A stretch of DNA of 63,829 bases, the filler included, from Octopus bimaculoides (Eukaryota): NCBI RefSeq assembly GCF_001194135.2. It is 8 parts of 7 records of this genome, joined end to end, with 100 filler letters (N's around TTAATTAATTAA, not from the genome) between each part and the next. Parts side by side here need not be neighbours in the genome. Positions count along the whole stretch, not along the records: positions 25,701 to 28,860 come from NC_069001.1; 7 more parts are not named here. One strand, 5' to 3'. Shown one piece after another: positions 26,303 through 28,448 of the stretch (position 1 is the stretch's first letter; the number at the start of each line of letters is the position of its first letter). Under the pieces are notes generated by a model. The model was not told where the DNA came from. It worked only from the letters and a program-made list of their open reading frames with translations, and did not search any database. Made by a program: the position numbers and the translations under genes.

Positions 26303-26454
26303 CTTCGTCTAATGGAAAACCGAATACAGCGTTGCTTGCATCACGGGGACGTCTGATTAATCACCTTCTTGCAACATCCGACCCTCTTGTTATACCTGCC
26401 ACGGACGAAGCAGTCCAGGTGGAGATAGAATTCACGATCCACAATATTGAACTG
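26303..26454 (+). CDS. Cys-loop receptor / AChBP-like subunit, N-terminal helix exon: SSNGKPNTALLASRGRLINHLLATSDPLVIPATDEAVQVEIEFTIHNIEL
   Basis: TTTTAACAG acceptor, GTAACC donor, phase 1-0; resembles the alpha1 helix to beta1 segment of nAChR ligand-binding domains. Confidence 0.8.
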
Positions 26455-27029
26455 GTAACCACAAATGCACACACACATTTTAACCCCGCTCCCCTTCCCC
26501 CCTCTTTTCCTTTCCTTCTTACTTTACTGTATGTCTCTTTTTCTATATAGTTACGACAAATGATATAACATGCTTAAATCAACGACCATTAACTGAAAAA
26601 AGGACTCAATACAAGAACCGAGTGTCTGATATTTTTTATAATTCAACGGGCAGTGATCTGTTGTTGTTGTTCTTCTTCTTCTTCTTCTTCGTCTTCTTCT
26701 TCCTCCTCCTCCTCTTCTTTCTTTCTTTCTTTCTTTCTTTCTTTATGCCTTTCTTTCGCCTTTTTCTCTTTTTTCTTCTCTTTCCTTCTTTTTGCTTTTT
26801 TCTTCTATTTCCTTCTTTCTTTTCTTTTATCATTTCTTCTTTCTCTTCTTCCTCACACTACGTCTGTACCTCATCTTCTCTAAATCTACACCCGTCCTCC
26901 TCCTCCTACTACTACTACTGTACTAGTATTTCTTTTTCTCTTTATGTCTTCATTTTTGTTTTCTTTCCCCCTTCTCCAAATTCAGTTCCTTCTTCGTATT
27001 CCCGTTTTCTTCGTTTTTCTTTCAAATAG

Positions 27030-27184
27030 GACGAACAAGAAAGGAAGTTTACAATCGACGGTTATTTTTTACGAAAATGGGACGATGTTTCGTTACGTTG
27101 GAACGCCAGTGATTATAACAACATACAGGAAATCTGCATTCCTATCCAAAACCTTTGGTCACCTGATGTAGTTCTTTTCAATTA
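27030..27184 (+). CDS. Cys-loop receptor exon: DEQERKFTIDGYFLRKWDDVSLRWNASDYNNIQEICIPIQNLWSPDVVLFN
   Basis: AG/GTAAGT boundaries, 155 bp, phase 0-2; W.D..LRW and LW.PDxVLxN motifs. Confidence 0.93.
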
Positions 27185-27261
27185 GTAAGTCAAAATTCAC
27201 ACATATATACACATACATACACTTACATATCCATACACACAGAAATACATATAGATACATG

Positions 27262-27342
<81 letters not shown>

Positions 27343-27467
27343 ATTCTTTTATTCTGTTATTCTNNNNNNNNNNNNNNNNNNNNNNNNNNNNNNNNNNNNN
27401 NNNNNNNNNNNNNNNNNNNNNNNNNNNNNNNNNNNNNNNNNNNNNNNNNNNNNNNNNNNNNNNNNNN

Positions 27468-27514
<47 letters not shown>

Positions 27515-27526
27515 ATTCTTTTATTC

Positions 27527-27741
27527 TGTTATTCTTTTACTTGATTCAGTCATTTGGCTGTGGCCATGCTGGAGCAACGCCTTTCGTCAAGCAAATTGAC
27601 TCCAGGACTTTGTAAGCCTAGTACTTATTCTATCGGTCACTTTTTTCGAGCCGCTAAGTTACGGAGACGTAAACACACCAGCATCGGTTGTCAAGCGATG
27701 TTGGTGGGGGAGGGACAAACACAGACACGCAAACATACACA

Positions 27742-27780
<39 letters not shown>

Positions 27781-27925
27781 CGGGCTCCTTTCCGTTTCCA
27801 TTTACCATATCCACTCACAAGTCTTTGGTCGTCCCGAGGCTATAGTAGAAGACACTTGTCCAAGGTGCCACGCAGTGAGACTGAACCCGGAACCATGTGG
27901 TTGGTAAGTAAGCTACTTACCACAC
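27527..27925 (-). mobile_element. SINE family A
   Basis: Reverse complement of the consensus, in intron of the Cys-loop gene. Confidence 0.9.
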
Positions 27926-28180
27926 ATAAATCTCCCCCCTCCCCAAAGCAGACTCTAAGTTATAGAGCAGTATATATTAAAGCTAGATAAGGGCCAGCCT
28001 TGTCACACTGTGTCACGCTGAATCTCCCCAAGAACTACGTTAAGGGTACACGTGTCTGTGGAGTGCTCAGCCACTTGCACGTTAATTTCACGAGCAGGCT
28101 GTTCCGTTGATCGGATCAACTGAAATATATTTCTACGTTTGTTGTTTTTTCGTTTTATTTCCGTTTTTTTTTTTTTTCAG

Positions 28181-28448
28181 TCAAGGATTGACAAACCCTT
28201 CGATGTCTCACGATGACGCGGTTGTGTATAGCTCTGGGAACGTGTTGCACGTACCAAGAATCTCTGACTCAGCTGTGTGTGCACTTGATATGTCCAAATT
28301 CCCTTTTGACATCCAGACATGTAAACTTATATATGGATCCTGGGTGTACAGCAGTCTCCAACTTAATATATCCTCAACTTCTCCTCCTGTTATCTCGGAA
28401 AATTACGAACTTAGCGAGAAGTGGGAAATCGTCAGCACAAAGTCCAAA
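28181..28448 (+). CDS. Cys-loop receptor exon with signature disulfide loop CALDMSKFPFDIQTC and GSWVY
   Basis: TTTCAG acceptor in phase 2 (TA+T = Tyr), C-x13-C loop with FPFD, ends WEIVSTKSK before GTAAGG. Confidence 0.93.

What the first reader, a model, noticed from the sequence alone, without database searches (positions are those of the whole stretch)
26303..28448. Divergent, intron-containing Cys-loop receptor/AChBP-like gene with an altered ligand pocket
Seen: three phase-compatible exons encode most of a pentameric ligand-gated channel extracellular domain with an intact C-x13-C loop. Loop B Trp is kept (GSWVY), loop A Tyr is Phe (PDVVLFN), loop D Trp is Tyr (DGYFLRKW), and the N-terminal helix and loop E are highly diverged. 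The 155-bp phase 0-2 exon matches the combined alpha7-type exons 3+4 as I recall them. Known: octopus has an expanded set of atypical nAChR-like genes, and its sucker chemotactile receptors are reported to have intronless coding regions and to lack the ACh site; molluscs also make soluble AChBPs. Inference: this could be a distinct non-ACh sensory or secreted lineage, or an intron-retaining relative of the chemotactile receptors. Loop C and any TM exons are missing from the contig, so channel versus soluble protein cannot be decided.
Basis: partly seen in the sequence, partly recalled or inferred. Interest (0 to 1): 0.72.

Follow-up and report, generated by a model that had tools for sequence, protein, structure and literature searches.

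The report
Octopus nicotinic receptor subunit exons
These are exons 2-4 of an already annotated Octopus bimaculoides nicotinic-receptor-family channel subunit gene whose loop C and membrane-spanning exons lie just beyond the contig, so it is an ordinary, if fast-evolving, family member and not a soluble binding protein or a chemotactile receptor.

Summary
Three AG/GT-bounded, phase-compatible exons (26303-26454, 27030-27184, 28181-28448) encode 191 aa matching Pfam Neur_chan_LBD (E 1.7e-37), with an intact C-x13-C loop. The N gap lies inside intron 3, flanked by an exact 66-bp duplication, and hides no exon.

The piece is identical to O. bimaculoides chromosome CM046621.1. The exons belong to RefSeq model XP_014769463.2 ("neuronal acetylcholine receptor subunit alpha-5, partial"). 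Downstream exons on the same chromosome encode an alpha-type loop C (YYPCCPESY, vicinal Cys) and M1-M4, so this is a channel subunit, not an AChBP.

O. sinensis and O. vulgaris carry intact 8-exon, 460-aa orthologs in conserved synteny. The gene sits in a cephalopod-specific tandem cluster within a molluscan clade that NCBI names alpha-9/10-like. No chemotactile receptor appears among its PDB matches, and published CRs are intronless.

The pocket changes are conservative: loop A Phe, loop B Trp, loop C Tyr/Tyr, loop D Tyr.

The mildly interesting part is that the extracellular domain evolves nearly neutrally (dN/dS 0.76) against 0.34 for the TM/ICD exons, while indels and stops are excluded. 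The pore also carries 9' Val. The ligand is untested. Low interest.

The parts
25701..26302 (+). 3' end of intron 1. It holds a SINE-like interspersed repeat (25701-25840) and a (GT)n/(GC)n microsatellite (about 26171-26230). Exon 1 (signal peptide) is not on this contig.
   Evidence: No coding similarity here. The repeat has 39 copies in 131 kb of related loci. The O. sinensis exon 1 maps into the assembly gap L003:7192-9429 just upstream.
26303..26454 (+). It encodes the mature N-terminus, the N-terminal helix (RGRLINHLL) and strand beta1.
   Evidence: AG acceptor and GT donor. 100% match to XP_014769463.2 residues 12-61. Orthologous exon in O. sinensis at L002:14604-14758 with identical splice flanks.
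26455..27029 (+). Intron 2 (575 bp), rich in (CTT)n and poly-pyrimidine low-complexity sequence.
   Evidence: Aligns to the O. sinensis intron at about 78-84% identity.
27030..27184 (+). It encodes loop D (TIDGYFLRKW, Tyr at 27063-27065), an N-glycosylation sequon (NAS) and loop A (WSPDVVLFN, Phe at 27177-27179).
   Evidence: dN/dS 0.99 against O. sinensis.
27185..28180 (+). Intron 3, containing the assembly gap 27364-27467 and interspersed repeats.
   Evidence: An exact 66-bp duplication flanks the gap. The gap persists in assembly v2. The ortholog has no exon here.
28181..28448 (+). It encodes loop E, the Cys-loop (28278-28322), loop B (GSWVY, Trp at 28341-28343) and loop F. It ends just before loop C.
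   Evidence: 100% match to XP_014769463.1 and .2. The O. sinensis exon is 6 bp shorter, in frame.
28449..28860 (+). 5' part of intron 4, with two tandem copies (97% identical) of a 196-bp unit that starts with an (ATT)n run. The contig ends in an assembly gap.
   Evidence: The next exon (loop C + M1) is at L003:15257-15448, beyond the gap L003:12590-15124.

Best explanation
The finding is exons 2-4 of an 8-exon Octopus bimaculoides gene for an alpha-type subunit of the nicotinic acetylcholine receptor family. It lies on chromosome CM046621.1 at about 4.794-4.803 Mb and is RefSeq XP_014769463.2.

Shown here:
- The exons splice in frame to encode the N-terminal helix and ligand-binding loops D, A, E, B and F, plus the Cys-loop.
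- The remaining exons on the same chromosome add loop C with the vicinal Cys pair, M1-M3, a short intracellular loop and M4.
- Intact positional orthologs exist in O. sinensis and O. vulgaris.
- The gene is one of at least four clustered paralogs that arose within cephalopods from a molluscan lineage that NCBI labels alpha-9/10-like.

Inferred:
- The product assembles into a pentameric cation channel. The -1' Glu of the selectivity filter is kept and there is no Pro-Ala-Arg anion motif.
- The channel is gated at an orthosteric aromatic box of Phe(A)/Trp(B)/Tyr,Tyr(C)/Tyr(D). This is compatible with cation-pi binding of acetylcholine or a related quaternary or primary amine.
- The natural 9' Val (usually Leu) and the loss of the 20' acidic ring suggest altered gating or conductance.
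- The extracellular domain is changing at close to the neutral rate while frame integrity and the membrane domain are conserved. This is expected for a recently duplicated subunit whose ligand or partner specificity is drifting or diversifying.
For: Identity and location:
- Pfam LBD match at E 1.7e-37.
- The piece is 100% identical to L003:9430-12589 of GCA_001194135.2.
- The exons are contained in XP_014769463.1 and .2.

Rest of the gene:
- Downstream exons map at L003:15257-15448, 17040-17141, 17483-17519 (cut by a gap) and 18264-18605.
- PF02932 (the TM region) is on record for the models.
- The AlphaFold2 model has an ECD beta-sandwich plus four helices (mean pLDDT 73.8). The 50 best Foldseek PDB hits are all nAChR chains, with alpha-7 best at 1.2e-30.
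- Loop C-M3 aligns without gaps to human alpha-7 (RYYPCCPESY against RFYECCKEPY, SKER against SGEK) at E 3.4e-16.

Orthology and phylogeny:
- The O. sinensis ortholog has 8 exons with the same splice flanks. Introns align at 78-88% identity and the upstream neighbour is syntenic.
- NJ tree: the cephalopod clade has bootstrap 97 and is sister to the bivalve/gastropod clade with bootstrap 87.

Selection:
- ECD dN/dS is 0.76, not different from 1 (p=0.30). TM/ICD dN/dS is 0.34 (p=0.001).
- There is only one indel in 575 exon bp, and it is in frame. About 36 gap openings occur in about 2 kb of aligned intron.
- P(no stop) under random substitution is 0.011 for the whole assembled CDS.
Against: - No transcript or expression evidence for this gene could be obtained. 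No transcript-derived protein for it turned up in the protein collection.
- Exon 1 and most of the M3 exon are hidden in assembly gaps, so a full-length intact ORF is not demonstrated in O. bimaculoides itself.
- ECD dN/dS is statistically indistinguishable from neutrality.
- An intact aromatic box does not guarantee ACh gating. The closest solved structure, Alvinella Alpo4 (F/W/Y/Y/W), did not respond to ACh in the hands of its authors (PMC10338036).
- The tree is a simple NJ tree without CR, AChBP or the full octopus nAChR set.
Confidence: 0.85

Rival explanations
1. It is a sensory, non-cholinergic receptor. On this reading, the fast-evolving tandem cluster is a second, intron-containing expansion of nAChR-like genes that detect environmental or other non-ACh ligands, functionally parallel to the chemotactile receptors.
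For: - ECD dN/dS is 0.76 against 0.34 for TM/ICD.
- O. bimaculoides vs O. sinensis replacements are marginally enriched in binding loops: 29/84 against 27/125, p=0.055.
- The genes are tandem, lineage-specific duplicates.
- The pore is derived: 9' Val, 16' Asn, 20' Asn.
- The closest solved relative, Alpo4, is an orphan that does not respond to ACh (PMC10338036).
Against: - The aromatic box and the Cys-Cys pair are retained, unlike what is reported for CRs.
- No special sequence similarity to CRs was found.
- The gene is intron-rich, whereas CRs are intronless (PMC11526382).
- No expression data place it in suckers or any sensory tissue.
- A high ECD rate is equally explained by relaxed constraint after duplication.
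Confidence: 0.1
2. It is a decaying duplicate (young pseudogene) that merely still looks intact.
For: - ECD dN/dS is not different from 1.
- Both RefSeq models are partial.
- No transcript-derived protein was found.
- Exon nucleotide identity to O. sinensis (85-90%) is about the same as intron identity (78-88%).
Against: - There is no stop or frameshift in 1170 assembled coding bases. The probability of this under random substitution is 0.011.
- There is one in-frame indel, where about 10 would be expected from the intron indel density.
- All splice sites are conserved.
- TM/ICD dN/dS is 0.34, significantly below 1.
- Full 460-aa ORFs exist in O. sinensis and O. vulgaris.
- The partial models are explained by assembly gaps.
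Confidence: 0.04
3. It is a soluble AChBP-like secreted protein.
For: Only the fact that the contig ends before loop C, and that molluscs make AChBPs (established knowledge).
Against: - Exon 4 ends at a conserved GT donor in phase 0. The next exon encodes loop C fused to M1.
- The orthologs have four TM segments.
- Native AChBPs are not among the 60 best PDB matches; only alpha-7/AChBP chimeras appear there.
Confidence: 0.01

Closest known systems
Octopus sinensis / O. vulgaris 'neuronal acetylcholine receptor subunit alpha-5(-like)' (XP_029656644.1, CAI9738545.1)
   Same: Positional ortholog. It has the same 8-exon structure and splice flanks, alignable introns and a syntenic neighbour. M1-M2 is nearly identical, and the loop C CC pair and F/W/Y/Y/Y box are the same.
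   Different: Overall identity is only 77%, and 65-82% within the three ECD exons. There is a two-codon indel in loop E. The ECD evolves almost neutrally.
Neighbouring O. bimaculoides paralogs (the two halves of the fused model 'alpha-7', 715 aa, and XP_014769464 'alpha-10')
   Same: They share the cluster, the exon structure and the short conserved intracellular loop. The closest paralog (64-66% identity) shares the derived M2 with 9' Val, 16' Asn and 20' Asn.
   Different: They differ in ECD loops. For example, the paralog lineage in the N-terminal half of the fused model, and its Argonauta ortholog, have Met instead of the loop B Trp.
Molluscan alpha-9/10-like nAChR clade (e.g. Aplysia californica NP_001267752.1; Crassostrea, Mytilus, Gigantopelta, Patella homologs)
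   Same: It is the sister group in the NJ tree (bootstrap 87). It shares the SKER pre-M2 motif and the highly conserved post-M3 motif RGPRxRKxP...LVCLGxDxYxPLxExE. Loop D is Tyr, Phe or Leu rather than Trp across the clade.
   Different: Identity is 30-36%. These relatives keep 9' Leu and an acidic 20' residue.
Alvinella pompejana Alpo4 (PDB 8BX5), an orphan annelid Cys-loop receptor
   Same: It is the best solved-structure match for the ECD (E 2.9e-33). It shares the loop A Phe, loop B Trp and two loop C Tyr (PMC10338036).
   Different: Alpo4 lacks the vicinal Cys pair and keeps the loop D Trp. Its loop E His131 aligns with Arg here. It belongs to an annelid lineage (PMC10338036).
Human alpha-7 nAChR
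   Same: It is the best match for loop C-M1-M3 (gapless, E 3.4e-16) and the best Foldseek match. Both Tyr, the CC pair and the -1' Glu align.
   Different: Overall identity is about 24-25%. Differences are loop A Tyr to Phe, loop D Trp to Tyr, 9' Leu to Val, 20' Glu to Asn and -2' Gly to Lys.
Cephalopod chemotactile receptors (CRT1, CRB1)
   Same: Both are nAChR-derived pentameric-channel genes in a cephalopod, tandemly arrayed, with rapidly evolving ligand-binding domains (literature: PMC11526382 and bioRxiv 10.1101/2025.10.28.685082).
   Different: CRs are intronless and have a remodelled hydrophobic pocket. This gene has 8 exons, keeps the aromatic box and the CC pair, and shows no CR chain among its PDB matches.

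Membership tests
Cys-loop / pentameric ligand-gated ion channel superfamily | Extracellular ligand-binding domain (Pfam PF02931) | tested here: met
   E 1.7e-37, profile positions 3-185 of 216.
Cys-loop / pentameric ligand-gated ion channel superfamily | Signature disulfide loop C-x13-C | tested here: met
   CALDMSKFPFDIQTC at 28278-28322.
Cys-loop / pentameric ligand-gated ion channel superfamily | Four transmembrane helices (PF02932) in the same gene | tested here: met
   These lie outside the window on the same chromosome: exons at L003:15257-18605. PF02932 is on record for P0001. Four helices appear in the model. The M3 exon is partly hidden by an assembly gap.
nAChR alpha-type subunit | Vicinal Cys-Cys at the tip of loop C | tested here: met
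   YYPCCPESY in exon 5 (outside the window), aligned to alpha-7 FYECCKEPY.
nAChR alpha-type subunit | Aromatic box: Tyr(A), Trp(B), Tyr+Tyr(C), Trp(D) | tested here: inconclusive
   Trp(B) and both loop C Tyr are kept. Loop A is Phe and loop D is Tyr. All five positions stay aromatic.
nAChR alpha-type subunit | Gating by acetylcholine | not testable with these tools
   This needs electrophysiology. The closest solved relative, Alpo4, was ACh-insensitive (PMC10338036).
nAChR, cation-selective pore | Glu at -1' and no Pro-Ala-Arg insertion before M2 | tested here: met
   SESKERITLG aligns with alpha-7 ADSGEKISLG. 9' is Val rather than Leu.
Acetylcholine-binding protein (soluble AChBP) | The protein ends after the ligand-binding domain, with no TM segments | tested here: not met
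   The gene continues into M1-M4 exons.
Cephalopod chemotactile receptors | Intronless coding region | tested here: not met
   There are three exons in the window and 8 exons in the ortholog. CRs are described as intronless in PMC11526382 and PMC13174522.
Cephalopod chemotactile receptors | Closer in sequence to CRs than to conventional nAChRs | tested here: not met
   No CR chain is among the 60 best PDB matches for the ECD (all E<=9e-18). None is among all 37 matches for loop C-M3 at E<=1e-5 or in the Foldseek top 50. Caveat: no CR sequence could be fetched, so no direct alignment or tree was made.
Cephalopod chemotactile receptors | Loss of the ACh-binding signature and a hydrophobic pocket | tested here: not met
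   The aromatic box and the CC pair are retained.
Cephalopod chemotactile receptors | Expression in sucker sensory cells | not testable with these tools

The most novel reading that the evidence does not exclude
The octopod tandem cluster to which this gene belongs could be a second neofunctionalising expansion of nAChR-like channels, independent of the intronless chemotactile receptors. The cluster consists of intron-rich, alpha-9/10-like genes. Their ECD evolves at a near-neutral or diversifying rate, their membrane and intracellular domains are conserved, and the youngest pair has a derived 9' Val / 20' Asn pore. Such receptors might be tuned to ligands other than ACh or might have unusual gating.
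Probability: 0.1. Interest if true: 0.55.

Novelty: already known. Interest (0 to 1): 0.2.

Why it matters
It also shows that the apparent truncations come from assembly gaps: the partial RefSeq models, the missing signal-peptide exon and the missing half of M3.

Biologically, the gene is one of the roughly 78 nAChR-family genes reported for O. bimaculoides (PMC6896357). It illustrates how a young tandem duplicate can keep its membrane machinery under constraint while its ligand-binding domain drifts.

Only if the ECD divergence proved adaptive would it add a second route, tandem duplication of intron-rich genes, to receptor innovation in cephalopods beside the retroposed chemotactile receptors.

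Tried and rejected
- **Exact look-up of XP_014769463.1.** It found no contig. The locus was reached through the neighbouring model P0002 and the cluster member P0011 instead.
- **Word-indexed protein searches.** They returned very few relatives, 14 at most, and no CR. They could not supply a CR sequence.
- **PDB searches to expose CRT1/CRB1 and Foldseek.** No CR chain was listed. A direct alignment or tree with CRs could therefore not be made, and the negative rests on ranking only.
- **Primary CR papers (PMC7605239, PMC10228259, PMC11055638).** They are not held. 'Intronless' is cited from a review and a preprint.
- **Full-text search for the accession.** It found no paper.
- **Rfam scan of the piece.** It gave only sub-threshold hits on microsatellites (mir-297 at 32 against 90 bits; sno_ZL1 at 24 against 64 bits). 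I rejected these as chance.
- **Search for exon 1 in the piece and in L003.** It is not present. The syntenic position falls in an N gap.
- **First Biopython bootstrap tree.** It timed out. I replaced it with a numpy NJ bootstrap.
- **First BLAST pass.** It mixed two loci held in one file. I corrected this.
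Full report
**1. What is in the sequence**

The piece 25701-28860 carries three open segments on the + strand, each bounded by canonical splice signals:

| Exon | Coordinates | Length | Acceptor | Donor |
|---|---|---|---|---|
| A | 26303-26454 | 152 bp | ...ttttaacag\| | \|gtaacc |
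| B | 27030-27184 | 155 bp | ...tcaaatag\| | \|gtaagt |
| C | 28181-28448 | 268 bp | t-run cag\| | \|gtaagg |

These are read. Joined, they give one stop-free frame of 191 codons; the other two frames are full of stops.

The product matches Pfam Neur_chan_LBD at E 1.7e-37, continuously across both junctions. It also matches 360 distinct PDB sequences of pentameric channels. The quoted motifs are present at the stated places:
- C-x13-C at 28278-28322
- GSWVY
- PDVVLFN
- DGYFLRKW

HMMER alignments to human alpha-2 and to Alpo4 show that the Phe and the Tyr occupy the canonical loop A Tyr and loop D Trp positions. No other part of the piece has coding similarity to the family on either strand.

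**2. The assembly gap**

The N run 27364-27467 lies inside the intron between exons B and C. The 66 bases before it, (TA)n TGTGTGTGTGTATTCTTTTATTCTGTTATTCT, recur exactly after it. This is the signature of two contig ends that overlap in a microsatellite and were not merged.

The same 104 N are still present in the chromosome-level assembly. In the O. sinensis ortholog the corresponding exons are consecutive, with P0003 residues 127/128/129 spanning the junction. The stretch matching the gap is about 250 bp of microsatellite intron. The Pfam and homolog alignments run through the junction without a missing segment. No exon is hidden in the gap.

**3. Where it comes from and what the rest of the gene looks like**

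A protein search returned XP_014769463.1 of Octopus bimaculoides, 100% identical from the Met in exon C onward. Its cluster mate XP_014769463.2 ('neuronal acetylcholine receptor subunit alpha-5, partial', 422 aa) contains all three exons exactly.

The genomic locus (L003, CM046621.1:4784374-4812981 of GCA_001194135.2) is 100% identical to the piece at 9430-12589.

Downstream exons lie on the same strand:

| L003 coordinates | Content |
|---|---|
| 15257-15448 | loop C ...VETRYYPCCPESYVTY, M1, start of M2 |
| 17040-17141 | M2 |
| 17483-17519 | start of the M3 exon, cut by gap 17520-18186 |
| 18264-18605 | intracellular loop and M4 |

The RefSeq models therefore contain two artefacts, both caused by gaps: an N-terminal 'LKILFLSILTA' translated from intron 1, and 'AFSHPLNLSLQ' in place of the second half of M3. 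The signal-peptide exon maps, by synteny with O. sinensis, into the gap L003:7192-9429.

The question 'channel or soluble protein' is thus settled in favour of a channel subunit.

An AlphaFold2 model built from the family alignment shows the beta-sandwich plus four helices (mean pLDDT 73.8). Its 50 best Foldseek matches in the PDB are all nAChR chains, with human alpha-7 first.

**4. Orthologs, paralogs and phylogenetic position**

O. sinensis XP_029656644.1 and O. vulgaris CAI9738545.1 (460 aa) are the positional orthologs. The evidence is as follows:
- There are eight exons with the same splice flanks.
- Introns align at 78-88% identity.
- The last exon of the upstream neighbour is collinear.

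The O. bimaculoides locus is a cluster:
- Upstream lies XP_014769464 ('alpha-10').
- Downstream, tail-to-tail, lies a 715-aa model ('alpha-7') that is a fusion of two adjacent paralogs.

A search of 1.84 billion cluster representatives found 11,805 homologs. The nearest representatives outside the gene's own 50% cluster are only 47%, 40% and at most 36% identical.

A bootstrapped NJ tree of 28 family members gave these groupings (names):

| Grouping | Bootstrap |
|---|---|
| This gene with the O. sinensis/O. vulgaris orthologs | 99 |
| That group with the C-terminal paralog of the fused model | 100 |
| That group with the upstream neighbour | 89 |
| All of these in a cephalopod clade with Argonauta sequences | 97 |
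| Cephalopod clade sister to a bivalve/gastropod clade that NCBI labels alpha-9/10-like (e.g. Aplysia NP_001267752.1) | 87 |

The whole clade shares an SKER motif before M2 and a strikingly conserved short post-M3 segment. A related paralog lineage is represented by an intron-free 1.8-kb Logan contig that translates directly. That contig is probably a transcript.

**5. Relation to chemotactile receptors and AChBPs**

Chemotactile receptors are described as intronless, retroposition-derived and remodelled to a hydrophobic pocket (PMC11526382, PMC13174522; bioRxiv 10.1101/2025.10.28.685082). This gene is intron-rich and keeps the alpha signature.

I could not obtain a CR sequence for a direct alignment. 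The ranking evidence is this:
- No CR chain appears among the 60 best PDB matches of the ECD, whose weakest member is mouse 5-HT3A at 9e-18. One CRT1 entry is 9E6B, named in the bioRxiv preprint 10.1101/2025.10.28.685082.
- None appears among the 60 best for M3-ICD-M4.
- None appears in the complete list of 37 matches for loop C-M3 at E<=1e-5.

Native molluscan AChBPs are likewise absent from the top 60; only alpha-7/AChBP chimeras appear. The CR and AChBP readings are therefore not supported.

**6. The ligand pocket and pore**

| Position | Residue here | Canonical residue |
|---|---|---|
| Loop A | Phe | Tyr |
| Loop B | Trp | Trp |
| Loop C | Tyr-x-Cys-Cys-x3-Tyr | same |
| Loop D | Tyr | Trp |

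A loop D residue of Tyr, Phe or Leu is a trait of the whole molluscan clade, not of this gene alone. Loop A Phe also occurs in Alpo4 (PMC10338036).

The substitutions are conservative and leave an aromatic cage capable of cation-pi binding. From my own recollection, Aplysia AChBP also carries Tyr at the loop D position and still binds nicotinic ligands. I did not test that here.

The caveat is that Alpo4 has an intact cage and yet is an orphan that did not respond to ACh (PMC10338036).

In the pore the -1' Glu is kept, which predicts cation selectivity. The 9' position is Val instead of the near-universal Leu, 16' and 20' are Asn, and -2' is Lys. This set is shared with the closest paralog but not with the rest of the clade. 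By established knowledge, substitutions at 9' Leu in other nAChRs increase agonist sensitivity and slow desensitisation, so unusual gating is a reasonable inference.

**7. Evolutionary rate**

Nei-Gojobori estimates between O. bimaculoides and O. sinensis:

| Region | dN/dS | dS |
|---|---|---|
| Three ECD exons combined | 0.76 | 0.18 |
| Exon A | 0.67 | 0.14 |
| Exon B | 0.99 | 0.15 |
| Exon C | 0.68 | 0.22 |
| TM/ICD exons | 0.34 | 0.15 |

Further tests on these counts:
- The ECD ratio is not distinguishable from 1 (p=0.30).
- The TM/ICD ratio is below 1 (p=0.001).
- The ECD has more nonsynonymous change than the TM/ICD (p=4e-5).
- Replacements are marginally enriched in the six binding loops (29/84 against 27/125, p=0.055).

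Against a pseudogene reading:
- The 1170 assembled coding bases have no stop. The probability of this under random substitution is 0.011.
- There is one in-frame 6-bp indel, where the intron indel density predicts about ten.
- All splice sites are conserved.

The gene is therefore maintained, with a ligand-binding domain that is either relaxed or diversifying. Two species cannot separate these alternatives.

**8. Verdict**

The finding is a correct reading of three real exons, but of a gene that is already annotated. With its downstream exons it is a conventional-architecture, alpha-type nAChR-family channel subunit from a cephalopod tandem cluster. Massive lineage-specific nAChR expansion in molluscs, with 78 genes counted in O. 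bimaculoides, is published (PMC6896357; PMC13174522).

The fast ECD and the derived pore are modestly interesting and testable. Nothing here points to a new kind of system. I left out no step on safety grounds.

Noticed in passing
window 25701-25840: A SINE-like interspersed repeat. About 140 bp recur 39 times, at 71-100% identity, in 131 kb of the related O. bimaculoides and O. sinensis loci, including short tandem runs in L002 around 5286-6474.
   Followed up: partly
window 28465-28656 and 28661-28852: Two tandem copies (97% identical) of a 196-bp unit that begins with a long (ATT)n run. Fragments of the unit recur near other genes of the cluster.
   Followed up: partly
window 27298-27363 and 27470-27535: An exact 66-bp duplication on both sides of the N gap. 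It probably reflects two contig ends overlapping in a microsatellite, so the true gap may have zero or negative length.
   Followed up: yes
L001:10001-67431 (O. bimaculoides CM046621.1): The RefSeq model 'neuronal acetylcholine receptor subunit alpha-7' (P0002, 715 aa) is a fusion of two adjacent paralogous genes. The first runs from its N-terminus to early M2. The second supplies a full ECD through to the ICD.
   Followed up: partly
L003:18200-18522 vs L003:27379-27047 (inverted): The last coding exon of this gene and that of its tail-to-tail neighbour show 0 mismatches over 333 aligned columns, although the two proteins are otherwise about 65% identical and the preceding intron is 87% identical. 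This is either recent gene conversion or an assembly artefact next to a gap.
   Followed up: partly
L003:10001-10033 and 18252-18263: XP_014769463.2 contains translated intron at its N-terminus (LKILFLSILTA). It also carries a spurious AFSHPLNLSLQ segment in place of the second half of M3, because exon 1 and the M3 exon fall in assembly gaps.
   Followed up: yes
L003:17040-17141 (M2 exon, outside the window): The pore lining is derived: 9' Val instead of Leu, 16' Asn, 20' Asn and -2' Lys. Only the closest paralog shares this set. The rest of the clade keeps 9' Leu and an acidic 20' residue.
   Followed up: partly
alignment A1, post-M3 region (outside the window): A very short intracellular loop carries a motif conserved from bivalves to octopus (RGPRxRKxP...R.IFL..L..LVCLG.D.Y.PL.E.E..SMRG). 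This suggests a conserved intracellular interaction site in this molluscan clade.
   Followed up: no
alignment A1, loop B column (paralogs in L001 and Argonauta hians P0004): The paralog lineage in the N-terminal half of P0002, and its Argonauta ortholog, have Met in place of the loop B Trp (YGSMVYN). This is a more drastic pocket change than anything in the gene under study.
   Followed up: no
window 26167-26237 (+) and 27198-27265 (-): Sub-threshold Rfam hits (mir-297 at 32 against 90 bits; sno_ZL1 at 24 against 64 bits) fall on GT/CA microsatellites. I regard them as chance.
   Followed up: yes
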